Shown: positions 19,330 through 41,576 of the stretch, in pieces
How the letters are laid out: every line of letters begins with the position of its first letter
Position numbering within the stretch: position 1 is the stretch's first letter
Assembly: GCF_036588685.1 (NCBI RefSeq)
Contig: NC_086376.1
Coordinates: 65,782,001 to 65,846,000, forward strand
From: Mytilus trossulus
Lineage: Eukaryota
Length of the DNA: 64,000 bases
Direction of reading: 5' to 3'
Translations under genes and position numbers: made by a program
The notes under the pieces: model-generated
What the model saw: the letters and a program-made list of their open reading frames with translations, nothing else
What the model was told of the DNA's origin: nothing
The model's database searches: none

Positions 19330-21354
19330 CTAAACCATTTCATAAATTTTGACAACATTTCTATTTGTGTATCCGACATCTGACAGAAAAAATCTGTCTC
19401 CACATATGTGAATAGCAGCCGGATGTTCTAGTCCGTCGGTTGCATCTAGCAGCACGCGCGCATCAGATCCGTCAGACGACATTTTCATTACGTTCGAGGA
19501 ATTTTGTCCACATACGTATATGTTGTCTTGACTGTCAATACTGACACCTCTTGCCCAACGTATACTATCATGCTCAATGGACAACCGGACGTTCAAATCA
19601 GAATAAAGAACCACAGCTCGTTTTTCGCCGATGCCAACGGTTTTCTGTGTGACGACAATTTCAGCTGTGCGTTGGTTGATAGCGAGATGAAAAGGTCGAT
19701 TTTCAAACATTGCTTTACCACTACTTCTCCTGTGGACCGTATCCAACACATGCCCATCTACTTCTATGACGCTCATTGATGGGACGGGTTTATCAAGAGG
19801 AAACAGCAAAACCAGATTGCCACGTATCTCGTCAACGCCGTAGCATACTTTTCCAACAAAAACCACGTTTTGTAATAGGAGACTCTCATCTGTCATGTTG
19901 AGCAGAGCAATTTCCCGATTGTTTGGAAGTGTACATGCAAGAGTATTCATATCAACTTGACAAATATCGAACGGTTCAGATGTCAAAAGGACTTTCGAAA
20001 TGAAAATACCGGTATCCTTGAACATTTTGATTGTTTTGTTGTGAAAATCGCACAAGATAACTTTTCCATCAGGCAGATATATTCCACCAGTAATAACGCA
20101 GTCGTTTGTATCTGAAGGCAGACGAATGTGGAAATCTCTTATCAGAACAGCACGTTTATCCAACATTGGTTTCATTTCGGCGATAGGCTTCGGAGCATCT
20201 GGTCTACCATGGGAAATTTTAATCTCTCCTAATTCCATCACAGTTGCTGGTATGTCTCTAGCTTTTGGGTTGAATCTAAATTTTATATCAATACTTTCTA
20301 ACTTTGCCGAGTTTTCCATCGCCTTTTGTTTAAAATCTAAATAGTTCTCACGCGCTTTGGCAACTGTTGCAACGAACTGAGCATTACTTCCATAACTCGC
20401 TGTAGCTTGAATCATCTTTCTAGAATGTTCAATGGCTGACTGTGTAACTTTGCTGTCTTGAATTCTTGACTGAATCTTATCCTTTTCCTCTTTGTGTATT
20501 TTAGTCAGGCGTTGATTAAAGTTTTCCTCCAATTTGTCAAGATGTCCAGTAATCGATCCTCTAAATGTTTTCATCTTCTTTTTTATGTCATCTTTTTTGT
20601 TGTTCAGGTTTTGATGTTGTTTGATGTTTTCATTTACAATTTCTTCGAGTGAAGATAGACACTCGTTAAATTGTTCTACTAGTTTCTCTACCTCCCGAGT
20701 ATTTTTTAACTCTTTCGCATAAAATTCAGTTGTAAGAACTTGGACGCATCTTCTATGTTCCAGCGCTACACAAACAGAGCAGACGAGAGTGTTATGATCT
20801 AAACAGAAGAGCTCCATATTTTGATTATGGCGACTGCAGCGAAGTTCATCGTCGGTAAGTATGGCTGGCTGGCGAAGAGCTTGGTCTACAGGCATAGTTT
20901 CGTGATCCAGAAACAATGCATTGTGGTAATTGATGCACGTCTTGCACAAACAAATACGACAATGCTTACACCAAACATCAGCACGGACACTTTCCTTGTT
21001 CTGCTTTTTGCAGGGTTCGCAGGTTTTCTCATTGTTTTCGAAAGACATAATCTCCATGACATTCATTATAAATCCATTTGTCGGTAGTTGTTCTGCCCAC
21101 ATGGATGGTGCTGCTGTTGAATCGATCGGAATTGCGATTGCTCGACATTGTGGGCAAGGGAACGAATTTGGTCTAGGATTATCGTTGTCCTGTGTATAAC
21201 GATCAATGTATGTTCCAAGACATTTCTGACAAAATGAATGAAGACATGGTAGACTCTTCGGATCTGTAAACCTGTCAGAACAAATCGGACACTTCACGAC
21301 GGCATCATCCAAGTTGGATTTTCCATTTGGTCGTCCTTTTTCTGATTTACTCAT
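19330..21354 (-). CDS. Intronless tripartite-motif (TRIM/RBCC) E3 ubiquitin ligase with C-terminal NHL-like beta-propeller (TRIM2/3/56/71-like, bivalve-expanded type), 674 aa
   Basis: Uninterrupted ORF. C3HC4 RING (CPIC...CLHSFCQKC...CPQC), B-box1 (CEPC...CKHCRICLCKTCINYH), B-box2 (CSRH...FCLDHNTLVCSVCVALEHRRC), long coiled coil, then NHL-like repeats (GVSIDSQDNIYVCGQNSSNV). Confidence 0.92.
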   Translation of the reverse strand: MSKSEKGRPNGKSNLDDAVVKCPICSDRFTDPKSLPCLHSFCQKCLGTYIDRYTQDNDNPRPNSFPCPQCRAIAIPIDSTAAPSMWAEQLPTNGFIMNVMEIMSFENNEKTCEPCKKQNKESVRADVWCKHCRICLCKTCINYHNALFLDHETMPVDQALRQPAILTDDELRCSRHNQNMELFCLDHNTLVCSVCVALEHRRCVQVLTTEFYAKELKNTREVEKLVEQFNECLSSLEEIVNENIKQHQNLNNKKDDIKKKMKTFRGSITGHLDKLEENFNQRLTKIHKEEKDKIQSRIQDSKVTQSAIEHSRKMIQATASYGSNAQFVATVAKARENYLDFKQKAMENSAKLESIDIKFRFNPKARDIPATVMELGEIKISHGRPDAPKPIAEMKPMLDKRAVLIRDFHIRLPSDTNDCVITGGIYLPDGKVILCDFHNKTIKMFKDTGIFISKVLLTSEPFDICQVDMNTLACTLPNNREIALLNMTDESLLLQNVVFVGKVCYGVDEIRGNLVLLFPLDKPVPSMSVIEVDGHVLDTVHRRSSGKAMFENRPFHLAINQRTAEIVVTQKTVGIGEKRAVVLYSDLNVRLSIEHDSIRWARGVSIDSQDNIYVCGQNSSNVMKMSSDGSDARVLLDATDGLEHPAAIHICGDRFFLSDVGYTNRNVVKIYEMV

Positions 21355-23230: not shown

Positions 23231-24975
23231 GATGAGTTTAATTTCAAAACAAAGTCTTTTACATGAGCTTTACTGAACTTTAAACCAAGTTTGCTATTCA
23301 TTCATTTTGTATCAGTACCTGCCCTATCTACAATCATTAGATATGAAAGAAAGACTATGCATTTCGAATAAAGGTCGTTATTGTTGTTGGTTTTTTTTTA
23401 AATTGGTAATTGGTAATTGCTTATTAATTGTAAAAACAAAAATTAAATTTCTCATATTTTTTCAACTTTCGAAATAAATTATAGATAGTGTACCGATTTC
23501 GGAATAGCCTAAGGAATTGTTTCATTTCCATAATATCACTAGGCAACAATTTCGTTTTAGAATAAAGCTGAATAACTTAAAACGTCCGATTCATGATTAA
23601 CATAAAATCTTTCGAAAATCAATAAAATTACATTATTATTGTTAAAATATGAAGGCAGATGGTTTTCACACAAATCGATTTCAGACATACAGGTAAACTG
23701 AAAAATTTGAATAAAAATAATTAATGATTTCTAACGTGAAATGATATCAATGGTATGATGCAAATATGATTAAGATTAGAGATAAAATTTGACTGATTAA
23801 CCTGGGCGTTGATGCACAGTATTCGCCAGGTATTTTGATGGTAGAGGTTAGAGGTCATCAGTGTCGATAATTGAAGGGATGTCAATATCAATATGGCGAA
23901 ACAGGACAGGTAAGTCCTATTATTTTTATAACTTAAGAAAATGTCATTCAAGATTTAGATTAATATTTTCACCAGTAACTGAATACGAATATAATGATTT
24001 CATTTCTTAAAGTTTGAATTGTTCTTTTTTTCATACGCCTACATATATAATATATCAATATACATTTACTAGGTTCAAGTAACAATAATACGTCTTAATT
24101 GTTGTAAATTACCCCAGAAATATTGATGAATGTACGTTGTTATTACAGGAAAAAATATGTTTTTTTATTTTAAGTCATCAGGACAACTGAATTAGACGAT
24201 TACATTAATATAAATGTTGGTTTTAACCAGGACTTTTTGTGGTTGAATATCACCAGCTTCTTTAAAATTGCGCAATGCAACCAGTTTAAAAGATATACGT
24301 TTTCGGAAAGCTTCCATTGATAACGAAGTGATCAAATTATTAAAAATTGTCACCCTGAATTGTAATGATAAGTTATAAAGAAAAAGATGCATGTTTTACA
24401 AAGGATCCGGACGGGTACATAGTTAGAAAACATATGTTTAAACTGAAACATTCTTTGTTTCATACATTTTAAACACTAAGTCTTGTTTGTTCGTTAATCC
24501 TGTAACAATCTTTATAATATATTAAAAAAAATGAAGAAATATACAAATGTATTGAAAATTTGAAACACAAATCAATCATTTTTTATTTTCATATTCATAA
24601 ATCTAGTTTTATGTAAATTTTGGAAAAAAATCCATAAAATAACAAATCAATTTATTACATAAATACACTTTTTGATTTTTAATTCTTATTTCGACCCTTT
24701 GGCCAATTTGATGATCATAACGTAAAACAATATCAACAAAGTCATCAATAACATGGTACATCATACATATTATTGTTCGGATACATAAAATGGTAGCACG
24801 GCCTTGTTCCCACAACTATAAAACTGACATGATTTGATGACCGGAATGTCCGTCATTATCATCACGAACTATTTATTGACAGGTTTAATTATACAAGACA
24901 TAATGGATTTAATTATTTTTTGTTTGATTGTAGTGTGGTTGTGGTTTTCTTCGGTCATTCTTGTTATCCAACCGG

Positions 24976-25145: not shown

Positions 25146-27261
25146 TAATTTCCCCGTTTAGAAAACAGCGAGGTGATGTGTTCATTCAGGATAACTAAAT
25201 GTATCTATTAAAAGCTTAATGGGGGGATGAGCAATTGCAGGTTACTGTGCGGCTTCGACAATCTACAAAACCCATCAAGTACAATTAGCTGTATCAGGCC
25301 CTTATAGATATCAGAATACAGAAAAAAACGTCTTTTACACTAGTGATTCAGGTTTTTGACCGAACAATACTTCACTACTAGTTTCATGTACTTTTATTGT
25401 CGCTCTGTTGGAGATACGTTCATATAACCAACAACCTCCTTGATATAACAAAGCAATACTTTAAATAATAACATTCTGTGACATAAAAGATGAGGAAAAC
25501 CAATAGACAAATATGAAATAAAGTCTTTATTCTGTTGTTTACTAATTCGGGAAGTAACATACTTAAGTTTTTAAGCTTACTAGATACGAGATGATAAATT
25601 GTTTTTGATAAATAAATTCCAAACAGATGTTATTTGAGTACAGGGAGCGATGCACTAAACGGCACGTTTACATCAGCATATCCGTGATTGATAAAAATTA
25701 TATAATCATTAACAAAAAAAATGATCAAAGTCCAAATTCATTCACACCCTTTTTTTTTTTTTTTATCAAATCAACAACTCTCACTTTGGGTATAATCTAG
25801 TCCAAAATTGCTCTGAAACCCTTCTAGACCGACTTGTTTGGACCGCGTCCTTTAGTATACAAATTACACGCTAAACCTTTAGAGGGGCAACATATGTCAA
25901 CTACACTGTACTACATGTGTAAGTATAAGAGCAAGAGCACATACAAATAACTGAAAATAAGTAAAAATCTTGAAGAAAACGAACTAAAAATATGAAATAA
26001 GGATGGGAAAGGGGGTCCATGTTCCAAACACTTATAAAAAAAAACTGATATCTAGCTGACGATAAGGCAATATGCGATTGTAACTAGTTTATAACTTCTG
26101 TCAGAGAACCAGGGTAGTGCGATGTTTTTTCAAGTAACTGTTCGCTATCGTAATGACATTTGACACAGATATAAGTGGATTAGTTATGGACATCTGAAAA
26201 AAGCACTTAAAAATGTTTTTTCCAGTAACTATTTCATTTTATCACGGTTTTATCAATAAGTCAATTAAAATAGCGACTAATGTTTTTAAAATAGTTGAAT
26301 AAAAAAAAAATGAATAATGGTAGTTATAGCGAGAAATGTCTTGTAACTAATTTAATTTAAATTAACTTGATGTATTGAATTCAGGGTTTCAAATGACATA
26401 CCAACTTCGGGATCAGATCTTCAAGAAAAAATAATATATTTATTCATTGATGAAACCATTCAAAGGTACAACAGTATATATATATGTGGGTAATGGAGCT
26501 TTGATAACGCTGAACATAGCTAAAGAAAAGTCTACAAAAACACGAGGCTAAAAATTATCCTTCAGACTGCAATTAACACTTAACATTAATATATATCAAT
26601 GCTTCTGGTGTACTTTAATATAAAATAGCTGATAAAAAGCAGCTATGCAAATTATACATATTAAATATGTGTGAATGATAAATTATGCAATAATAACAAT
26701 TTAAAAACAGCTGCTTTATATGCTTGAATGTTCATACAAAATATACTCGTGCTCGTATATATTTTGTATACTAAATATATGACAAACGTTAAGCATTCAT
26801 AAAGGCCACCGTATTCTTGAACAGCGGTACAAAAATAACCTAAAACAGTTTTGGAGTAGAGGGAAAAACAAGTTTAACAGGGCTGAAGAATACGTACATA
26901 CATACGATAAATATGACCGTGAATATCGGACAACTGACCTCATGGCTACTATAAAGTATTTAATTATGAATAAGGCGTCAATGATAAAAGGTCCATTAAT
27001 GGTCAACTCTCCTCTGGAAATACTTACGTTACCATTACAAATTAATTGATTGTTATAAAATGTTTGTCTGGTGTCGTGTCAATCTATCTATTGTTTATTC
27101 AAGATGACAATTATACATACAAACAGAATATATAATGAATTAATTTGAGCTGGCATGTTCTCACGAAAAAAATGTTTGGTAATGATAAAAAATGCATCTG
27201 AAAAAAAAGTGCGAAAATTTATTAAATGTAAAATGTTTGTTTCTTGTTTATTCTATATAAG

Positions 27262-31745: not shown

Positions 31746-32256
31746 CACTATAACGCTTGGGGGATGGACCCCAGCTTTTTCTAAATATTTTGTTTGTGTA
31801 TATGTTGTTTTTTTTTAGAAAATGGTCTATAATATTTTAACTTATTGAATATGTTCTGCTCTTTTTCATACGGTTTTACAATAGTTTAGAAATTTGGACC
31901 CTCCATTGTGGAAAACAGAAAATGAGGGTCAAAATTTATAAAACATAGTATGGTATGGACAAAAGCAGGACAAAATATTTGAATTTCATTTTATTATGTC
32001 ATATCAAGAACATACTGCGTGAAATAATTTGAAATCAAATTTAAATTTGAATTTATTTTTTTCACTTCCCGTATCTATCATGAAATTCCTCTTACATGTA
32101 AATGTCAAGTCTTTTAAACAGGAAACGTTTTCTATTTACAACTTTTGAATAAATTTATTGAATAGTTCCTGCATATTTAGACAACATTCAAACCATAATG
32201 AGCATACCCCACACATAGTAACAATTGTATTAAAGTAGTTTCATTTGCCCCCACAG

Positions 32257-35200
32257 GTGTTGTCGATCTCTGAAGACATTTATAAGAGGATTATGTGTTG
32301 AGTGTACCATTATAGCACTGACAGTTGTTGACATATTTTTCATAACAGTAGAATTATTGATCAGAGCAGAAGTTTTGCAAGGTAAGGATTTAGATTTTAG
32401 AAAAACAAGAAACATCAATGGCTTAAGCAAACAGATTTAATCTTAATCTGATATAGAGATTATTGACTAATGTGTATGCAGGTGTCAATGATGCAGTTCA
32501 TTTCTACATTCCTCATGCATATTATATCATGTTTATTGTGGGAGTTGAATATATAACAAAGTGTATACAAGTATATAAATAATATCATGGTAGCTGCTTA
32601 AAGAGTCTCTTATCAGCCAAATTATCTATTAAATGTGATAGAAGTGCCATGTAAGCGAGAGGTTTAACAAGCCATAAAACCAGGTTCAACTCAGTTTTTT
32701 TCTTTAAATGTCCGGTTACAAATTGGAGATATGGCAGTGGTTATCTGATACTTCCATTTCTATTTATGTTGGCGTTTGTTTTTGTTTCGCTTCAGTGTTT
32801 CAGTTGTTCCGTTGTTTTCCTCTTCTAGATGGATTGTTTCCTTCAGGTTTAGTTTGTAACCCGCATTTGTTTTATCTGAATCGATTTATGAACAGGGGTT
32901 TTCTACTGTTGCCTTTAACGATATGCAAAAAATAAGCACTGTAAATAATAATACAGCCTTTTCCAGTAAAATCAGAAAAATCAAGAGGAACACGATGATT
33001 ATTTTGCTGCTTTTATGTCAGTTGTTTTATAGATATAATTGTTTAATGCATTATTATGGGTGAACTGTTGTGACTTTGCTCTTCAACTTGAATCAGTGGC
33101 GAGGTTGATACTTACTTTTACCTTTGGCCTTAAATTATAAGAACTGATTTCGTAGCATAGTATTGATGACAAATAAACTTTATATACCATGTACGCGAAT
33201 ATGTTAATCTGATGTGACAGTTATAATAAGTATGACCAAAGTTGAAATAACATAAACTAAACATTCGAGCGAAAAGAGTCATCACGAAAGGAATGGTGAC
33301 AACCTAGCATATATATTGTGAATACAAAGACTTGTAATCTCCTTTAAATGTATTTGGTTTGTACCATCCATTGTAGAAAACAATACCATGCATGTCAGGA
33401 ATATGGCAGTTTTTTTTCAAGATGTTTGTTTTTATGTATGTTAGCGTTTGTTTTTGTTGCACTTCAGTGTTTCTGTTGTTCCGTTGTTTTCCTCTTATAG
33501 ACTATAGTTGATGTGTTTTGTCTCAATCGATTTATGACTTTCGAACAAAGGTGAGGCCTTTATTTGTAGTATTTGTATACGATACTTCAATGAAGCACAA
33601 ATTAACTAGGCTGACGTGATGATGTTTATTAAACATTTAATTTATGTACAGTCCAATGTTGCTAGATTTTCCCATTTGCTCTTAATATCTTTTCTTAAAG
33701 TTCAAATTGATAAAATCATATCATAGTCCATCAAAGTACAAATTATTACAATTTTTAGAAAATCACATATCACCTATAAGATGACCGAATAGCACGTGGA
33801 GATAGATGATATCATACATATAAACAGAGCAGATAATTATATTTACCAGGATTAGATATAAATGTAATTCCTCTTACTTGTTTAACGTTACGGTCAGTGA
33901 CAAATAGTTCATAGATATTCAGAACGATCAATGTTTAAGAAGCTCTATTCAATATATTTTTGGTTTGCTTAATCAATAAGCAAGCTTTTAATCTGTATTC
34001 TATAAACTTGCTACATTTGAAATAAAAAAAATAAACATTAAACTAAATGGAAACAATGATTCCATATTGCATTAGTATTTCACATGTTTTGCTTCCTTTA
34101 ATATATCAAACATACTGATATTTAAAAAAAAATCTACAGCTGTCATGACTGTCTGCATTTAATTCATAGACATTCGATATCTTATAACTTTTGCCACATT
34201 TTTAATACTGTAACTCCAATATAGCGTGTATAATATCTCGGAAGATAATTGTTTGTTTTAATTTAATTTAATTGTTTCCAAAAAAATATTTTTTGTTTTT
34301 GTTTCAGATCCTTCTGAAAGCAAGCCAATAGATTATCTTAGTAGTCAAAGTTCTAACACAACAGCGCAGAATGATATTGATCCAGGAGGAGGTTGTCGTA
34401 CATGTAATTTTGATACGTCTCTTGGGGCTGCATACTGTGTCTCACATTACATAAGTTTAGTTATAGCTATGATCTTCTTTATAGAGGTAAGAATGGTTAC
34501 TACAAATACAATGCATGCACCATCTTCATTATTATATCAAGTCATTATCAGTTGGAACTGATTTAAATTCTAAATACCACAAGCCAACACAACTAAGGTT
34601 ATACGGGCTGTAGTGGTACCATCCACATTTTACTAGCTTATACAGATTGTTTGATTGATTCTTGGTTGCTTCAAGTTAACGTAAAGTGGCAAATATTTCA
34701 TGCATGTACAGGACGAAGCTTATGAAGAGCAGCGGTCAAGTGAATGATATACCTGTATATAGATATATATGAATATCATGTGTTAGGTCAATTTTGATTA
34801 ATTTTTATTTCTGGCTACTTAAGTTCGGTAAACACGGAAATGTGGTATGATTGTCAATGAGAAAGTTATCCACCATCGACCGTCAAAATGACGTAGATGT
34901 TTAAACTTATCGGTCGTCCCACTGTCTATATCACTCTGTTCAGCTCTTAATATTATTCCGTATCATGTCTTTGTGACGTCAAATACGTTGACCCGGTCTT
35001 AATAACTTTGACCCGGACTTATCAGCGACGTCATAATGTTTGAACCGACGTTAATAACTTTGACCCCAACTTATCAAGTCATCTTTTGAGTGCTGGTGAA
35101 ACAAAGAAAACACTTCCGAAACACACAAATATAGCCCGATAAATCGATTATCAGATTATCTGCATATTGATATTGTAAAATATCAGCTGCTTGACATAAT

Positions 35201-38200
35201 ATGAAGGCTTTTTGATCTCGTTCGCTACGCTCACTCGACAAAAAGCTTCATATTATGTCTCGCAGCTGATATTTTACGATATCAACATGCAGATAACCTG
35301 ATAATCGGTACATATTTTTCAAAACATTTTAAAACATTTTTGTTTTTTATATGACAATTTAGAGCATAAGAGATGTTTTCCCCCAATTCGATTACCTAAT
35401 GGCATTTTTTCTTCTTTTTTTCAGTTATTATTCCGATTTGTAACCGGCTGTTCAAAAATGTGTAAAGATGTAATACAGGTAATCTAAAGTATATTTATTA
35501 ACCTTATTTTGTTAATATAGCACGAAAATGTTCCTTTCGGTTCAATGCAGAGACCTCTCTATTTTAACAAACTTGATCATGACAATTGAAATAGTATCAA
35601 ATATCACACTCTTACTATACTATACAAGTGTGGACACAGATCAGTTTTGGTTGGAATTTTCAATTTACGTTTAAAATATGTTCGACATTATTATCATCAC
35701 CGCGAATTTTTCCTCACCGAATTTATGTATTGTTACTTTACCATATAAATGTCACTCTTATAAAAAAAATTATATCTATCGCAACTCGTGTGCTCGTCTT
35801 TATAAGGATAACAAAATCCGAGATCTACATTTAATTATACGAAAAAAACCACTAATGCACTGAACCCGTGATCTTTAAGAAATGTTATTTCCACAAGCTG
35901 CTAACTTCCTTTACTGTTTATGAAATTGCTGTATGAATATTTATATGGTTATTGATATACATATAGAGGGTATATAAGACGGCATGAGTTCATATCTTGC
36001 TAAGTATTTTCAAGTTTCATCGCACTTTCAGTAACAGCGAACAATCTTTGTAACGATATTATATTTTAAAACCTGCATTATGTGGTTGTGGTTGTGATTA
36101 TCTGATATATATACCGTTATTTCAGAGTTCCGTGCTTCTCCCGTGCGATTTCTTATATGTATTCTATAAGAGCCTTTTGTTAGTAAATTCGTCGAAATTT
36201 AATGAGAGAGGGATGCAATCTAAAGAAAGAAGAGCAATTCTAGCCCCACCACATATTCATATGCCTGACCATGCTGCAGGGTCAGAAGCATCGTTATGGA
36301 CGATCTGTCTTAATGACATGTACGTGAAACCTAAAGATCTTATCATCTTTTATTTCAGCTGATAGACAGTTTTACAGTATTTAACCTTGCTGCTATTGAG
36401 GTGCTGTTCACAATATTTTGGGAGAAAACTTTGTGCTTTCATATAGCTATAGAAGCCATTACTTTTATAGTAGCACTAAGGTTGTTGCGAATACCAAAAG
36501 CCTGCAATGGTAGGTATACCTTTTATTCTAATGCAATAAGTTTGTAACGGCAATTTTCATTGGACGTTGACAAATATTTTGAGGGGTTATATTCCACGTT
36601 CTACCAGTCCGTAACTAAGAAAGCCACCATTTTGAATTCCGATATTTTTTGGGTATGTAATTTCCTCGTAATTTCTCAAAAAATAAACAAGATAGTCACA
36701 TTCTGAGCCTTAAAATCTTCTTTTTGTCTATATTGAAACCATTCTGAAGCGTACGCAAGGTAGAAATACGTTTCGTATTCATGTTAGACAACCAGAGCAT
36801 ACATATGACGTCACATTGTTTAAATGCTAAAGACGATGCAACAGTTTCGCGGAGTTTTTCATTTATGGCATTTTCAAGCCAAATATTTATTAAATGAAGT
36901 GTATGTTAATATGTGGCATTAGAATGGAGATAACTGTATTGTATTTTAAGCTTGGCCTTCGTAAAACTTGATTTTACTGTCGCAAATATCCGTTTACCTA
37001 TCTCCGCTCCGCGTCGCTAGGTAAACTCAATTTGCGACAGTAAAATCGACGTTTTACGAAGGCCAAGCTTAAAATACAATACAGTTATCTCCTAATTTTT
37101 GACTATCAGACATTTTAGGAAAATTTGAAATACCACGTTGCGCTCAGATATAAATTAAGTAACCAATAAATGATATGATTGACTTTCAATAATAAATGAA
37201 GATGAAAATAAATGCAAATATGTCAAAATTTGATAAGCTAAACAATTTGTTTATCTAGAAATTAATGCGAACTTTCATGTTTGCGAATCCTTGATCATTG
37301 CTAATATACGAAATTACATAAAAAAAATGATGAAAGTAAAACGATCCCTAAATTTTGAATGCATGTTTTATTATTGTGGCTGAACCTGATGCTGACGTAT
37401 TTTATTAAAACATTGCAACACTCTTTGAATTTAAAGTATTATACCATGCTAATATTTCTAAATTTTCATTCTAGTATTAAAAGAAGATTATTCTGAAAAG
37501 ATGGATTTGGAAGTGCATTATTTAAGCAAGGCCAAATCTAAAGCAGAAGAACGTTCAAGAGAGCTTGCTAATACAGTACAGAAGCAACAGGTAACTATAC
37601 AACCTATAGCATACGTTGTCAGTAATATCTGTACGCCACAAATTCATACACCTTGGAAATAAGGGGCAGGGTATGACAAAATATTAGACTTGCATTGATC
37701 TGCTCTTTACTATGTATGAAAAAATAAAAACCATAAACCCACAAATGAAAGAATATTTTTTATTTACAAAAGTAAAATAAATGGATGAATTTATCTTAAG
37801 GTATTCTAATTTCTCAATATACAGAACAAGTGGCTTTCTTTAAAAAAAAGAAGAGCAATACGTGAACCTAAGACCATGACTTGTCACTGAAAGATTGTTG
37901 TTGAATTTTTGTTTGCGTTTGAGCTAAAATAATTTACTGTAAATCGAATGAGACAATGATAATGTTAAACTTCCTTTATTAAAGCTATGTCCTTGTGTGC
38001 ACATACTTGCACAAGTTAGTTGAAAGTAATGTTAAATAGATATTAATAGAAAAAAGTAAATTTATAGATACTATTATTTGAATACGGTATATGCATTTTA
38101 AAGCTCGATTATTGTTTAAATCTCTTTTGAATGTACCCCCCCCCCCCAATCTTCTTGCAAATCCCAGTGTCTGTAAACCGGATGTCGGATGCAAATTGCA

Positions 38201-41200
38201 CAAACCAATCGCAATATAAATTTCAGCAGTTATTTTGCTGAATATAATCCAGATGCATTTATTTCACCTATTATATCTTTATATCTAAATTTGTTTTCTG
38301 CATGGACGTCCTCAATTAATAAAGCTGTCTATCTGTGTTATTTCCTTCTTTTGGTCTAAACCGATTAGAACAACAAGGCGATTATTTTACTTTACTGAAT
38401 TAAATGTAAATGCACCTTGGACTTTTTTTCACAATTTGATTTTTTTTCTTAAGCAGTAAGATCATAAAACTTCATAATATGTGTTTCTGGTTTCTGGTTA
38501 AATGTGGGAAACTGTATTAAATTAATCTGTATTGCAAAATTAGACCTATAAGAGTCAAGCAATACAATCAAACAATAATTCTATACAATACAATGCAATA
38601 CAATGAAATACAATGTAATACAGTGCAATACAATATAATACAATACAATATATAGAATAATAGAACATTAGAGTTCAATTATAAATGTATGTAAAAAACA
38701 CCATCATAACCTTGTCTGACACGGGTCTGACTCCCTCAGTTCTAAAGACTGTTTAATGAAGACTCCAACATGACAAACAAGTTCAGGGATGGGGTTTAGA
38801 ATGTGTTTAAGTTTATAGAATGCATCAAGATGTTGAAATAGTGGTACATAGTCTTTTAGATAAGCAAAAAGAAGAGCAATTGAAAAAAAATGTATTTTAC
38901 AGAAATCACATAAAACTACTATTATTTTCACTTCCTTATTCAAATAGTATATTGTATAAACTTGTTTAGATTTATATTAATTGTGGCTAAGTTGTGCATA
39001 AGTTCAAAACTGAAATACTGTAACGAAATTTAGAATAAATTATAAGCCAAATGTTATGGATGAGACAGGTCTCTGAGATTGTTCTTTTCGGTTTTTTTTT
39101 ACCAGTTTTAAAAGTCCCTTGAGGTATTCTTTAACTGTGTTTATATTTTTATTCTGTCTCCATTTTAATAGACTGAAATAGAGACACTGCGGAAACAGTT
39201 AGGGTCAGGATCTCTGTATGAAAATGATATTATAGTACACACACGAGGGACAGATGATCTAGGTGAGTATATAATAACATTGATGACCACGTGATGTATA
39301 TGTTTCAATTGTCAAAGCTACAACCCTGTTCTCAATTGTAACATTATGGAATGTGACTTGTCACAAATATTGACTTGTCATAAACACTTGACTTGATGGG
39401 TGCCAATATAGTGGATCAGGCTCTATTTACACTTTTTTGGCCACATATGATTATTGAACAAAGCATTTGACGTCTACACTTTAAATTTCTTCATTCATTA
39501 GGAAACAAATCGGTACAGCATAGTCCTTCCCGATATTTTTTCTTCCGATTTATATGAAAATTGTTAATATGAAAAGCATATGGCCCGCTATAACGACGTT
39601 ATCCATCGAATCGAATGCATGGTATGTTTTGCTTATTTAATAGTTTGTAACTTTGACTTAATATGTTTCATTAGAAAGAAGTGATTGCAAAGTCATGTGA
39701 CTTCATATTATTGTTATTTTTTACAGACTCCTCCACTATAAGTAATGGTCATGTTCCTAGTGAAGCATCAGTGACCCATAGTGGACACAGTGGACTATCT
39801 CCTAAATTTGTTTCAACCATCAAAACTGACAGTCATATTGTTTCTATGACAACCCCACCTGTTCCAAATCGTGAAAGTAAAGACAGCAATGTATCTTATG
39901 CAGTCATAGAAAATAACTCAAACAGGCAAAGAAGGCATGAATCCGGTGAAAATAAAGCAATTTATAAAAATGTTTGTCATGTTAAAAGTCCTTCACAAGA
40001 AGTTAAACGGACAAGTAGTGAGGTTGGCTCAAGGATTACTTTCGAAAGTGATATCGACACTAAAAACCTTATTCATAGATCTAAAAGTACAAAAAGTTCA
40101 AAAGGAGAGGCCATTAGAAGGGCTATTGCAATGCTAGAAAATAACAAATCACCAATTGAGACAAACCCAGGTGGACCAAGCGTGTCTCGCACTCCATCAA
40201 ATAAACTCAGTGATCTAGACAATACAAAACTACAAGGTAAATTATAAATGTTTCTTCAAAATCAGTATGATTTTGCGTATGAGTGTATTCGACCAATGGT
40301 TGATGTTTTCGTTGTTGGTTTAAATATAAAAGTGTACGTCAAAACGTTTTACTTTCAATTTATAGGCATACAGAAATTAACATCAATTCAAAAAATCAAG
40401 GCAAAAGTTGCTGGTTATCGGTAAATTTGAGAATTAATATTATATATTATGTTCAAATCAGTAAATTGATTAATCTATCAATGAATAAAAAAAATCTTTA
40501 ATTATTCAGTGTGTTTTGTACTTACAGAAAATGATTCCGGCTGTGTGAATGGTTCATTCGAGAGTGATGAAGAAGTGGTGAAGAGAAATCTCCCAGTGAT
40601 GGCAGAATACCAGGGAACCCGAACATACAGAAGTGCTGTAAGTTTGTTGTCATTGTACAGTGACTAGGCCCTGTACAACGAAGCGTTGTTTCAGTTACCT
40701 ATTGGACACTCCCCTTAACCTAGGGTAATTGTGAAAAAGCACTCACAAAGATTTCGGTCACTTCATATGGCTACCACTTGTCTTATATCAATTAATTTAC
40801 TATGGAACTGGCTTGATTGAACATATACATTTGAAAGAAATTATGCAAGTGTTTTAATATTGAGGTTGCAACTCCCTCATACTTTAGGCGGATTGTGATA
40901 GTGGTGTGAGTGCCAATGAGACAACTCTCCATCCAAATAACAATGGAGCATGGAAGTAGTATGTTAATAGTATACTTCCGTGATAGGAGCAAACAATGAA
41001 ATATCATTAAAGAGTATCTATAAACACACTCATCAAAGATACCAGGACTAAATTTTGTATATACTCCAGACGCGCGTTTCCGGTCTACAAAAGTCATCAG
41101 TGACGCTCGAATCCAAAAAAGTTAAAAGGCCAAATAAAAGTACGAAGTTGAAGAGCATTGAGGACCAAAATTCCTAAATATTTTGCCAAATAAAGCTAAG

Positions 41201-41576
41201 ATAATCTATGCCTGAGGTAGAAAAGCGTTAGTATTTCAAAAATTCAAAAATTTGTAAATAGTTTATTTATAAATATAACCATATCAATGATAATTCATGT
41301 CAGCACAAAAGTGCTGACTACAGGGCTTGTGATACCCTCGGGGAAATAAATCTCCACCAGCAGTGGCTTCGACCCAATGCTAACAGCATGTACGTAAGAT
41401 GTTATTTAATAGTCTAGCAACGAAAATTGATACTGACTAGAATAAATAAATCCACAATACATGGTCTACGTAAAGATTCTAAATTGTACATGTTAATGCT
41501 TTCATTACCTTTTACCAATGCTTACGCAAGATTTGTTTTTGTATTTTAGGAGGGTGTTCCATTGACAGATCTGTAG
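32257..41576 (+). CDS. Voltage-sensor-domain-only protein of the Hv1/TMEM266 family (S1-S4, coiled coil, long disordered tail). Exons 32257-32381, 34308-34486, 35425-35478, 36359-36509, 37475-37590, 39172-39262, 39727-40236, 40528-40637, 41550-41576; 5' exon(s) unresolved
   Basis: Nine GT-AG exons join in consistent phase into 453 codons plus TAG. S1 TIIALTVVDIFFITVELLI (cf. Hv1 IIICLVVLDALLVLAELIL), S2 HYISLVIAMIFFIE (cf. HYMSITILVFFMME), S3 LIDSFTVFNLAAIEVL, S4 FIVALRLLRIPKACN, coiled coil LSKAKSKAEERSRELANTVQKQQTEIETLRKQL, C-terminus EGVPLTDL*. Confidence 0.88.
35145..35307. repeat. Fold-back element, 163 bp, in an intron of the voltage-sensor gene
   Basis: Near-perfect inverted arms (CGATTATCAG...ATATCAGCTGC / GCAGCTGATAT...CTGATAATCG) with apex GCTACGC at 35224-35230. 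Confidence 0.85.
36926..37092. repeat. Fold-back element, 167 bp, in an intron of the voltage-sensor gene
   Basis: Arms GGAGATAACTGTATTGTATTTTAAGCTTGGCCTTCGTAAAAC perfectly inverted; apex GCTCCGC at 37006-37012. Confidence 0.88.
38560..38960 (-). mobile_element. LINE 3' end with (AATAC)n microsatellite tail
   Basis: Degenerate pentanucleotide array at 38560-38650 adjoins a minus-strand remnant ending ...KHILNPIPELVCHVGVFIKQSLELR. Confidence 0.45.
41031..41380 (-). mobile_element. Second retrozyme copy with degenerate hammerhead, in the last intron of the voltage-sensor gene (antisense)
   Basis: Colinear with 17342-17713. The core CUGAUGA...GAAA CGCGCG UC is kept at 41063-41108, but stem II is disrupted. 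Confidence 0.8.

What the first reader, a model, noticed from the sequence alone, without database searches (positions are those of the whole stretch)
32257..41576. Hidden voltage-sensor-only protein: Hv selectivity Asp retained, but S4 is RLLRIPK instead of RxWRxxR
Seen in sequence: nine small exons, mostly invisible to the ORF track, splice into S1-S4 plus a coiled coil, with no pore or phosphatase domain. S1 has Asp (codon 32330-32332) at the position of the Hv1 selectivity residue D112, and S2 keeps FxxE. S4 (36479-36499) reads R-L-L-R-I-P-K: the signature Trp is Leu, the third Arg is Lys, and a Pro sits inside the helix. Established: Hv channels are defined by S1 Asp plus RxWRxxR; human TMEM266 lacks the Asp and does not conduct protons; molluscs have an expanded Hv family that includes altered-S4 members. 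Inference: this may be an uncharacterised Hv/TMEM266 subfamily with unusual gating (proton leak, shifted voltage dependence, or non-conducting sensor), possibly relevant to pH handling or calcification.
Basis: partly seen in the sequence, partly recalled or inferred. Interest (0 to 1): 0.8.

Follow-up and report, generated by a model that had tools for sequence, protein, structure and literature searches.

The report
Trp-less Hv-like voltage sensor in mussels
This is a real, expressed mussel gene for a voltage-sensor-only membrane protein related to proton channels; it keeps the proton-selectivity aspartate but lacks the family's hallmark tryptophan, and nobody has tested what it does.

Summary
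Nine exons (32257-41576, + strand) plus a missed first coding exon (ATG 23893) splice into a 459-aa protein. Four introns (exon1/2 to exon4/5) are confirmed as GT..AG joints in RNA-type contigs of four runs from four studies; two more junctions appear as contig overhangs. The translation is identical to XP_063434280.1, "uncharacterized protein LOC134715776 isoform X3" of Mytilus trossulus, so the gene is already annotated, not hidden, but it is uncharacterised.

It is single-copy here. Orthologues occur in mussels, oysters and scallops. The S1 Asp, S2 FxxE, S3 Asp/Glu and S4 R1/R2 are invariant. None has the S4 Trp. All 13 listed exonic variants in RNA contigs are synonymous.

A family profile hits Hv1 in the PDB (E 5.6e-8) about six orders of magnitude ahead of other voltage sensors. 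It shares a phase-1 intron with the canonical Hv1, Hv3-like and RLWRFFK genes of the same genome.

Architecture: voltage sensor, S4-contiguous helix, roughly 200-aa poorly conserved tail, and a near-invariant C-terminus ending T-D-L.

Best reading: a separate, old Hv-lineage subfamily, probably a fast or weakly latched proton pathway; a non-conducting TMEM266-like sensor is a serious rival. No function was tested.

The parts
23649..23692 (+). Alternative first coding exon (annotated isoform X2, 468 aa; MKADGFHTNRFQTY + split Arg)
   Evidence: tblastn of stored P0024 on the window; sequence read with GT donor at 23693
23876..23909 (+). First coding exon of the 459-aa form (ATG 23893-23895; M-A-K-Q-D + AG of a split Arg). 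The verified part is given; the exon probably begins further upstream
   Evidence: The 30-nt overhang of an RNA-type contig upstream of exon 1 maps uniquely here. GT donor at 23910. Same N-terminus MAKQDR in orthologues
26385..26465 (+). 81-nt cassette exon (27 aa) used by the 486-aa annotated isoforms
   Evidence: tblastn of stored P0022 and P0028; AG acceptor and GT donor read directly
32257..32381 (+). Exon with S1; Asp codon GAC at 32330-32332 (D31, aligned to Hv1 D112); Glu E38; ends ..LQ + split Asp
   Evidence: joint to next exon seen in 4 runs; HMMER alignment to human Hv1 S1
34308..34486 (+). Exon with the roughly 40-aa S1-S2 loop (N-T-T sequon, GGGCRTC with C77 and C80) and S2 (C91, H94, F104-x-x-E107)
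   Evidence: joints on both sides in 4 runs; all 7 listed variants synonymous
35425..35478 (+). 54-nt exon, S2-S3 linker (LLFRFVTGCSKMCKDVIQ; R111, K121, D122)
   Evidence: joints on both sides in 4 runs
36359..36509 (+). Exon with S3 (D128, E139), the S3-S4 loop (C151, H153, E157) and S4. R-L-L-R-I-P-K lies at 36479-36499. The exon ends one base after the Asn codon (phase-1 intron)
   Evidence: the query that found the orthologues
37475..37590 (+). Exon continuing the S4 helix into the cytoplasmic helical or coiled-coil segment
   Evidence: joint 36509|37475 in 4 runs, and the overhang behind 37590 equals the start of exon 6; helix 154-227 in AF2
39172..39262 (+). Exon 6: end of the helical segment and start of the tail
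   Evidence: overhang of contigs X3 and X12; splice sites; identical to the stored RefSeq protein
39727..40236 (+). Exon 7: 170 aa of low-conservation, low-confidence (probably disordered) tail
   Evidence: 18-21% identity between bivalve orders; pLDDT about 30; held by RNA-type runs
40528..40637 (+). Exon 8: start of the near-invariant C-terminal block (..VVKRNLPVMAEYQGTRTYRSA)
   Evidence: 83-86% identity across orders over the last 29 aa
41550..41576 (+). Exon 9: E-G-V-P-L-T-D-L-stop; the C-terminus fits the class I PDZ-ligand pattern (S/T-x-hydrophobic)
   Evidence: the PDZ reading is inference from the pattern only

Best explanation
Shown: this is an expressed, multi-exon, single-copy gene (Mytilus trossulus LOC134715776). 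Its 459-aa product is a four-helix voltage-sensor domain of the Hv lineage. S4 runs on into a cytoplasmic helix, followed by about 200 poorly conserved residues and a near-invariant C-terminal block of about 29 residues ending T-D-L. It belongs to an orthologue group present in mussels, oysters and scallops and kept under purifying selection. It is distinct from the canonical Hv1, the Hv3-like genes and the RLWRFFK gene of the same genome.

Inferred mechanism: the protein keeps the Hv1 permeation and charge-transfer set. These are the S1 Asp and Glu, the S2 Phe and Glu plus a basic residue, the S3 Asp and Glu, and S4 R1, R2 and K3 followed by Asn. I therefore expect S4 to move with voltage and the domain itself to pass protons. 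Loss of the Trp that latches Hv1 shut (its partner R3 is here Lys), together with a Pro one turn below R2, should make opening fast, weakly latched or negatively shifted. The result would be a quick or partly leaky proton pathway.

The helical segment probably dimerises the protein. The conserved T-D-L end probably ties it to a scaffold. Four invariant extracellular Cys and two His may form disulfides or a metal site like the Hv1 and TMEM266 Zn2+ site.
For: Gene and splicing:
- GT..AG joints for four introns appear in contigs of 4 runs from 4 studies, plus overhangs for two more junctions.
- Contig lengths downstream of exon 5 (741 and 818 nt) fit the remaining 738 nt of CDS.
- The translation is identical to stored XP_063434280.1.

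Selection:
- 13 of 13 listed exonic variants are synonymous.
- D31, E38, F104, E107, R111, D128, E139, R166 and R169 are invariant in 12 full-length sequences from three bivalve orders.
- The last 29 aa are 83-86% identical across orders, against 18-21% in the tail.

Hv lineage:
- A voltage-sensor profile hits human Hv1 5OQK at E 5.6e-8 and mouse 3WKV at 1.8e-7. The next voltage sensors score E >= 0.047.
- hhalign to Lottia Hv1 gives probability 97.7%, E 1.7e-12, over S1 through the C-terminal helix.
- The phase-1 intron one base after the N214-equivalent codon is the same in this gene, in the canonical Hv1, in four Hv3-like exons and in the RLWRFFK exon of this genome.
- The gene is single copy.

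Literature:
- W207A/S/F in human Hv1 still conducts. It opens 100-fold faster and at more negative voltages, and loses selectivity only above pHo 8 (PMC4621752).
- Lys at R3 is natural in the functional CgHv4 and fungal Hv channels (PMC10377628).
- AcHv3, which has a Pro in S4, conducts with a proton leak (PMC10911540).
Against: - No current, gating charge or localisation has been measured.
[quoted passage not shown] It is absent from every full-length orthologue found.
- More distant relatives do not keep the permeation residues. A marine-metagenome relative has His at the Asp site with RLWKIPR. By eye, the Aplysia LOC101854637 sequence printed in a review supplement has Ser there and no S4 arginines, yet keeps a similar C-terminus. 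The part common to the whole family is therefore the C-terminal block, not the proton path.
- The architecture (voltage sensor, coiled coil, long disordered tail) is that of the non-conducting TMEM266. The language-model neighbour search placed a scallop orthologue next to TMEM266 (0.90) as closely as to Hv1 (0.89).
- Structure prediction was of low confidence and fold searches were uninformative.
Confidence: 0.5

Rival explanations
1. It is a non-conducting voltage sensor of the TMEM266 (HVRP1) type. S4 moves with voltage, but the domain passes no ions. The signal is handed to partners through the dimeric helix, the long tail and the conserved C-terminal T-D-L block.
For: - The architecture matches TMEM266: an S1-S4 domain, a coiled-coil extension of S4 and about 250 disordered residues (PMC6392501; PMC4148356).
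- The C-terminal block is the best-conserved region.
- Relatives outside pteriomorph bivalves lose the Asp (His in L031; Ser in Aplysia by eye) and even the S4 charges, yet keep the S4 Pro-x-Cys; the Aplysia sequence also keeps the C-terminal motif.
- The nearest Atlas cluster is TMEM266.
- The hallmark Trp is absent.
Against: - D31, E38, E107, D128, E139, R166 and R169 are invariant over three bivalve orders. That is hard to explain if only voltage sensing mattered, because an acidic S1 residue at this site is the Hv-specific feature.
- Papp et al. report TMEM266 orthologues only in vertebrates.
- No TMEM266 sequence could be obtained, so orthology is untested.
Confidence: 0.33
2. It is a voltage-sensor pore with altered selectivity. 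Without the Trp and with a Pro kink, the domain would carry a non-selective cation, anion or omega-type leak rather than a clean proton current.
For: W207 mutants of human Hv1 lose proton selectivity at high external pH. Sea water is about pH 8 (general knowledge). Breaches of the hydrophobic gasket give leak in Hv1 and AcHv3.
Against: The Asp and R2 pair that sets selectivity is intact and invariant. There are no data.
Confidence: 0.1
3. It is a decaying duplicate or an annotation or splicing artefact with no function.
For: Pfam does not recognise the protein. The S4 signature is degenerate.
Against: - It is spliced in RNA-type contigs of four studies.
- The reading frame is intact over 10 exons.
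- 13 of 13 variants are synonymous.
- Orthologues in three bivalve orders have invariant functional residues.
- The gene is single copy.
Confidence: 0.02

Closest known systems
[quoted passage not shown]
   Same: - A four-helix voltage sensor without a pore domain.
- S1 Asp and Glu, S2 FxxE plus a basic residue, S3 Asp and an acidic residue, the Glu-Ala before S4, S4 R1 and R2, and Asn after S4.
- S4 continues into a cytoplasmic helix.
- Same phase-1 intron after the Asn codon.
- Best PDB match by about six orders of magnitude.
   Different: - Only 17-20% pairwise identity.
- Leu instead of Trp207, Pro at A210, Lys at R3, and Arg at the D123 position.
- A roughly 40-aa glycosylatable S1-S2 loop with CxxC.
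- A very short N-terminus.
- About 230 extra C-terminal residues with a conserved T-D-L end.
TMEM266 / HVRP1 / C15orf27 (vertebrate, non-conducting, Zn2+-regulated voltage sensor)
   Same: Voltage sensor, coiled coil and about 250-300 disordered residues; three S4 basic residues; Hv1 is its closest characterised relative; extracellular His and Cys that could bind metal. It is the nearest language-model cluster.
   Different: By the literature, TMEM266 lacks the S1 Asp. This protein keeps the Asp invariantly. TMEM266 orthologues are reported only in vertebrates.
Molluscan Hv3 family (AcHv3; LPWRxxR, leaky proton channel)
   Same: Unconventional molluscan Hv relatives with a Pro in S4, enlarged loops and large cytoplasmic parts, about 10 exons, and the same intron after the Asn.
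   Different: - Hv3 lacks R1, keeps Trp, and has the Pro just before Trp.
- Here R1 is present, Trp is absent, and the Pro lies between R2 and K3.
- Hv3-like genes sit elsewhere in this genome, on C9 and C43.
Bivalve Hv4 (CgHv4; minimal channel, RxWRxxK)
   Same: Lys at the third S4 charge; bivalve-specific distribution.
   Different: Hv4 is a minimal channel classed among the 200-250-aa conventional ones and keeps Trp. A separate RLWRFFK exon lies at C4:57.1 Mb.
Aplysia LOC101854637 (XM_013082371), and the large 'HV' sequences of Limulus and centipedes printed in the supplement of PMC10377628
   Same: By eye only:
- Aplysia shares the S1 motif L-C-x-E-S-x-V-I-T-L-T-I-V with the mytilid P0001.
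- It shares the S4 x-L-W-x-V-P-x-x-C-N frame, K-A-E-E-R in the helix, and a C-terminus ..K-T-Y-R-N-E-D-G-I-P-M-T-S-L.
- The arthropod sequences end ..I-P-M-T-S-L or ..I-P-V-T-A-L.
   Different: - Aplysia has Ser at the Asp site and no S4 arginines, but keeps Trp.
- The arthropod sequences read RLWRIKR, without Pro.
- None is characterised, and none could be fed to the tools.

Membership tests
Hv voltage-gated proton channels (criteria of Chaves et al., PMC10911540) | Four transmembrane segments S1-S4, no pore domain | tested here: met
   Four hydrophobic stretches and four helices (3-42, 85-113, 121-145, 154-227); nothing else recognised by Pfam
Hv voltage-gated proton channels (criteria of Chaves et al., PMC10911540) | Acidic (D/E) selectivity residue in the middle of S1 | tested here: met
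   D31 (32330-32332) aligns with the Asp of VVLDALL in human and mouse Hv1. It is invariant in 12 bivalve sequences
Hv voltage-gated proton channels (criteria of Chaves et al., PMC10911540) | Totally conserved Trp in the S4 signature RxWRxxR | tested here: not met
   Leu168 here. Leu, Phe, Ile or Cys in all full-length orthologues. Trp is found only in unnamed fragments P0005-P0008 and contig L031
Hv voltage-gated proton channels (criteria of Chaves et al., PMC10911540) | At least two positive charges around that S4 position | tested here: met
   R166 and R169 are invariant; K172 here, Arg in oysters and scallops
Hv voltage-gated proton channels | Sequence homology to Hv1 above other voltage sensors | tested here: met
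   Profile against PDB: Hv1 E 5.6e-8 and 1.8e-7, others >= 0.047. hhalign to Lottia Hv1 gives probability 97.7%. Shared phase-1 intron
Hv voltage-gated proton channels | Voltage- and delta-pH-gated, proton-selective current | not testable with these tools
   Needs electrophysiology
TMEM266 / HVRP1 | Voltage sensor plus coiled coil plus long disordered C-terminal tail | tested here: met
   Helix to residue 227, then a low-confidence, poorly conserved tail. Compared with the description in PMC6392501
TMEM266 / HVRP1 | No acidic selectivity residue in S1 (non-conducting) | tested here: not met
   Asp is present and invariant. The TMEM266 state is taken from the literature
TMEM266 / HVRP1 | Orthology to vertebrate TMEM266 by sequence or tree | not tested
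   No TMEM266 sequence could be obtained as a stored protein. There is only an Atlas lead (0.90). Papp et al. report vertebrate-only orthologues
Voltage-sensing phosphatases (VSP/TPTE) | Cytoplasmic PTEN-like phosphatase domain | tested here: not met
   No Pfam domain in the tail. VSP voltage sensors score only E 0.06-0.1
Molluscan Hv3 family | S4 LPWRxxR (R1 missing, Pro before Trp) and a very large S1-S2 loop | tested here: not met
   R1 is present, there is no Trp, the Pro is at another position, and the loop is about 40 aa. Hv3-like exons lie at other loci

The most novel reading that the evidence does not exclude
Pteriomorph bivalves keep a natural Trp-less Hv channel. It would be a dimeric, scaffold-anchored proton pathway with intrinsically fast or leaky gating (L at W207, P at A210, K at R3). 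Its extracellular Cys/His cluster would make it redox- or metal-gated. It would serve rapid proton extrusion in excitable or calcifying epithelia. Relatives in gastropods and other marine animals would have turned the same scaffold-bound module into a non-conducting sensor or adaptor. That would give a natural series from channel to sensor.
Probability: 0.2. Interest if true: 0.7.

Novelty: new variant of a known kind. Interest (0 to 1): 0.5.

Why it matters
The S4 Trp is treated as a defining residue of proton channels. Mutating it in human Hv1 removes four hallmark properties: slow opening, steep temperature dependence, selectivity at high pH and delta-pH gating.

This is a lineage that removed the Trp naturally. 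It kept the selectivity Asp and the whole charge network under purifying selection across three bivalve orders. It therefore offers a ready-made test of what the Trp and the Asp each contribute.

It also offers a test of where the line runs between a proton channel (Hv) and a silent sensor (TMEM266). The near-invariant C-terminal T-D-L block also gives a concrete handle for finding partners and a physiological role in animals for which acid-base handling and shell formation are central.

The gene models already exist, and the field knows of the molluscan Hv expansion. The gain is therefore a well-defined candidate and its conserved features, not a new class.

Tried and rejected
- **Exon-by-exon searches.** Pfam and PDB phmmer found nothing because the pieces are too short or too divergent.
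- **Pfam on full-length proteins.** Only a sub-threshold Ion_trans hit in the Saccostrea orthologue (22 bits against a cut-off of 25), and none in the 459-aa protein.
- **Structure.** AF2 on the full protein gave pLDDT 43 and on the voltage sensor plus helix 58.8. Foldseek gave no significant match. VIA-align gave generic four-helix bundles; Hv1 3WKV scored Z 9.0 among many unrelated bundles. Structure therefore adds only topology.
- **PF16799 (Hv1 coiled coil) in the own genome.** Only chance coiled-coil hits.
- **Word-indexed homologue searches.** Searches with P0001 and with full-length alignment A1 did not reach beyond pteriomorph bivalves.
- **No tree.** No TMEM266, VSP or characterised AcHv/CgHv sequence could be brought in as a stored protein, and sequences printed in papers were not typed into tools. 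No phylogeny was built for that reason.
- **How the spliced model was handled.** The window's joined model was not sent to any search tool. Full-length work used database proteins by id. One script concatenated the exons internally, only to count length and stops and to compare with stored proteins. Nothing joined was printed or searched. Alignment A3 was made from typed N-terminal parts (about 230 aa) of eight stored proteins plus four stored fragments.
- **Rejected readings.** Pseudogene; VSP; Hv3 or Hv4 member; identity with a characterised paralogue.
Full report
**1. What is in the sequence**

The window is AT-rich animal DNA (about 31% G+C).
- 32257-32381
- 34308-34486
- 35425-35478
- 36359-36509
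- 37475-37590
- 39172-39262
- 39727-40236
- 40528-40637
- 41550-41576

Each has an AG acceptor, exons 1-8 have a GT donor (exon 9 ends at the stop), and the phases are consistent. The Asp codon GAC lies at 32330-32332. The S4 codons AGG TTG TTG CGA ATA CCA AAA lie at 36479-36499. The stop is at 41574-41576.

**2. Transcription and splicing**

I chose runs that hold exon 7 and laid four of them, from four studies and three organism labels, on 31800-37700.
- Every run has one contig that skips exactly 32381|34308, 34486|35425, 35478|36359 and 36509|37475, with GT..AG ends.
- Contigs of two runs overhang behind 37590 with the first 30 letters of exon 6.
- One contig overhangs 204 letters upstream of exon 1. 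Its last 30 letters map uniquely to 23876-23905. There, ATG GCG AAA CAG GAC AG|GT gives M-A-K-Q-D plus a split Arg.
- Downstream of exon 5 the contigs continue for 741 and 818 nt, which fits the remaining 738 nt of coding sequence.
- The laid records are Logan contigs, not raw reads. Only one of the four runs is on record as an RNA library. The joints still show that the intron-less form exists in those samples.

With the start exon the model is 1380 nt, or 459 codons. It is letter-for-letter identical to stored protein P0025 = XP_063434280.1, 'uncharacterized protein LOC134715776 isoform X3 [Mytilus trossulus]'.

Annotated isoforms also use a cassette exon at 26385-26465 and an alternative first exon at 23649-23692. 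The gene is therefore not hidden from public annotation. It is simply unnamed. UniProt's automatic name for several orthologues is 'Hydrogen voltage-gated channel 1'.

A note on method: the joined model of the window was never sent to a search. Full-length analyses used database proteins by id. The only concatenation was inside one script, to compare length and identity with stored proteins.

**3. Relatives and conservation**

An exhaustive HMMER search with the S3-S4 exon found eight proteins at E <= 0.001. Word-indexed searches added more. The full-length relatives are:
- Five Mytilus species (94-99% identical) and another mytilid (73%).
- Oysters (Saccostrea, Crassostrea, Ostrea, Magallana).
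- Scallops (Pecten, Mizuhopecten, Ylistrum), at 35-40% identity.

In the 12 full-length sequences these residues are invariant:
- S1: D31, E38, R42.
- S1-S2 loop: C77, C80.
- Top of S2: C91, H94, Y95.
- S2: F104, E107, R111.
- S2-S3 linker and S3: K121, D122, D128, E139.
- S3-S4 loop: C151, E157.
- S4 and after: R166, R169, C174.
- Most of the last 29 residues.

S4 reads as follows:
- Mytilus: RLLRIPK (RLFRIPK in M. edulis).
- The other mytilid: RLIRIYK.
- Oysters: RF[L/C]RIPR.
- Scallops: RLCRVPR.

No full-length member has the Trp.

By region, identity between orders is 40-60% in the voltage sensor and helix, 18-21% in the tail, and 83-86% in the last 29 residues. All 13 exonic differences listed among the RNA contigs are synonymous. 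The gene is single-copy in its 1.3-Gb genome. Together these results rule out a decaying copy.

**4. Which family**

Single sequences and exons are invisible to Pfam and to PDB phmmer. Profiles are not.
- Full-length alignment A1 hits the two Hv1 entries at E 0.004, ahead of Ci-VSP at 0.2-0.3.
- Alignment A3 (voltage sensor plus helix) hits human Hv1 5OQK at 5.6e-8 and mouse 3WKV at 1.8e-7. The next hits (Nav VSD2, TPTE2, CatSper2, Ci-VSP) start at 0.047.

These alignments place:
- D31 on the Asp of V-V-L-D-A-L-L
- E38 on the following Glu
- H94-Y95 on F-H-Y
- F104 and E107 on F-x-x-E
- R111 on Lys
- D128 and E139 on the two S3 acidic residues
- E157-A158 on F-E-A
- R-L-L-R-I-P-K on R-L-W-R-V-A-R

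The last word-indexed search, with A3, brought in a canonical molluscan Hv1 (Lottia, P0041). hhalign gives probability 97.7% and E 1.7e-12 from S1 to the end of the C-terminal helix. Pairwise identity is only 17-20%.

Searching the own genome with the Lottia protein found several other Hv-type loci:
- A canonical Hv1 on C8 (RLWRVTRILNG).
- Hv3-like exons with [L/I]PWRxxR at four places on C9, two of them with identical copies on C43.
- One RLWRFFK exon on C4 at 57.1 Mb.

In all of these, and in this gene, the exon ends one base after the codon equivalent to Asn214: AAT G|GT, AAT A|GT or TGT G|GT. This is the same intron position and phase. The gene is therefore a separate, old branch of the Hv gene family, not one of the characterised Hv1-Hv4 types.

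**5. More distant relatives blur the picture**

- The unnamed fragments P0005-P0008 read RLWRIPR, RLWRIPQ or RLWKLPR. The family probably began with the canonical RxWRxxR plus the Pro, and the Trp was lost in the bivalve branch sampled.
- A 3.8-kb marine-metagenome contig (L031) carries four recognisable exons of such a relative. It has His at the Asp position and S4 RLWKIPR.
- The supplement of the review PMC10377628 prints Aplysia LOC101854637. By eye it shares the S1 motif, the x-L-W-x-V-P-x-x-C-N frame and a ..K-T-Y-R-N-E-D-G-I-P-M-T-S-L end. It has Ser at the Asp site and no S4 arginines.
- Large Limulus and centipede 'HV' sequences in the same supplement end ..I-P-M-T-S-L or ..I-P-V-T-A-L.

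I could not feed the printed sequences to any tool, so those links are by inspection only.

**6. Structure**

AlphaFold2 with the shallow alignments gave low confidence: mean pLDDT 43 for the whole protein and 58.8 for residues 1-228. The secondary structure is nonetheless clear, with helices 3-42, 85-113, 121-145 and one continuous helix 154-227, followed by a featureless tail.

Foldseek found nothing significant. VIA-align listed many four-helix bundles, voltage sensors and Hv1 (Z 9.0) among them, below the level that discriminates helical bundles.

The heptad pattern of residues 176-226 is modestly better than shuffles (163 of 5000). An N-T-T sequon in the S1-S2 loop fits the expected topology.

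**7. Mechanism**

Shown: an expressed, conserved, Hv-lineage voltage-sensor-only protein with three S4 charges and the full Hv1 acidic network.

Inferred:
- S4 moves with voltage, and the domain probably conducts protons.
- In human Hv1, Trp207 substitutions keep conduction but open 100-fold faster and at more negative voltage. They weaken delta-pH gating and selectivity only above pHo 8. The Trp latches the closed state through R211 (PMC4621752).
- Here both the Trp and the Arg partner are changed, and a Pro is added between R2 and K3.
- Lys at R3 is natural in the functional CgHv4 and fungal channels. AcHv3, also with a Pro in S4, shows a proton leak.
- I therefore expect a fast, weakly latched or partly leaky proton pathway. 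It would be dimerised by the helix and positioned by the T-D-L end.

The main rival is a silent TMEM266-like sensor. It rests on the shared architecture, on the C-terminal block being the most conserved part, and on the loss of the Asp and the charges in distant relatives.

I put about 0.5 on the conducting reading, 0.33 on the silent sensor, 0.1 on altered selectivity and 0.02 on no function.

**8. Novelty**

The review PMC10377628 states that bivalves have up to eleven HV genes. It notes that some molluscan sequences have lost consensus elements, including a 'tryptophan-free' pteropod sequence awaiting experiments. Three literature searches around Hv channels, molluscs/Mytilus and TMEM266 found no paper that characterises or names this orthologue group.

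It is a new variant of a known kind: real, well defined and testable, but not a new class.

**9. Limits**

- No tree with TMEM266 or VSP could be built.
- Run identities are coded, so tissue of expression is unknown.
They rest on contig lengths, overhangs and identity with the public model.

Noticed in passing
window 19330-21354 (- strand): An intact 674-aa single-exon ORF with RING, B-box and a weak NHL repeat (TRIM-NHL type E3 ligase). It lies about 2.3 kb upstream of the voltage-sensor gene's first exons, on the other strand.
   Followed up: partly
window 34560-35345 and 36525-37118 (introns 2 and 4): Intron stretches are covered by many short, high-depth contigs with internal 'skips' and 'goes back' joints. 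They include fold-back sequences around 35180-35300 and 36926-37095. They look like multi-copy MITE-like or fold-back repeats transcribed elsewhere, not part of this mRNA.
   Followed up: no
window 32588-32981 and 33376-33572 (intron 1): Two similar repeat copies about 650 nt apart share the stretch ...gtttgtttttgtt.cacttcagtgtttc.gttgttccgttgttttcctctt.... Abundant contigs jump between them, which suggests a dispersed repeat family.
   Followed up: no
window 38540-38660: A short minisatellite of (c/t)aatacaat(g/a) units inside intron 5, and a C10 run at 38138-38147.
   Followed up: no
G000 C8:3490051-3491582 (L018, L019); C9:55016549, 55096538, 22353726, 6830391; C43:2011416, 2097031; C4:57105816: Inventory of other Hv-type genes in the same genome:
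- One canonical Hv1, with S1-S4 on a single exon.
- Hv3-like exons ([L/I]PWRxxR) at four places on C9.
- One RLWRFFK exon, possibly Hv4-like.
The C43 hits are identical to two of the C9 hits, so they may be haplotigs or a recent duplication.
   Followed up: partly
L031 (ENA OREC01030544, marine metagenome, 3820 nt): A compact eukaryotic gene fragment of the same family from an unknown marine organism. It has His at the S1 Asp position and S4 RLWKIPR. Three tandem copies of a unit of about 93 nt lie just upstream of the S3-S4 exon.
   Followed up: partly
window 36485-36487 (codon 168): The residue that replaces the hallmark Trp is itself variable within the genus. It is Leu here and in M. galloprovincialis, M. 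californianus and M. coruscus, and Phe in the M. edulis RefSeq protein.
   Followed up: partly
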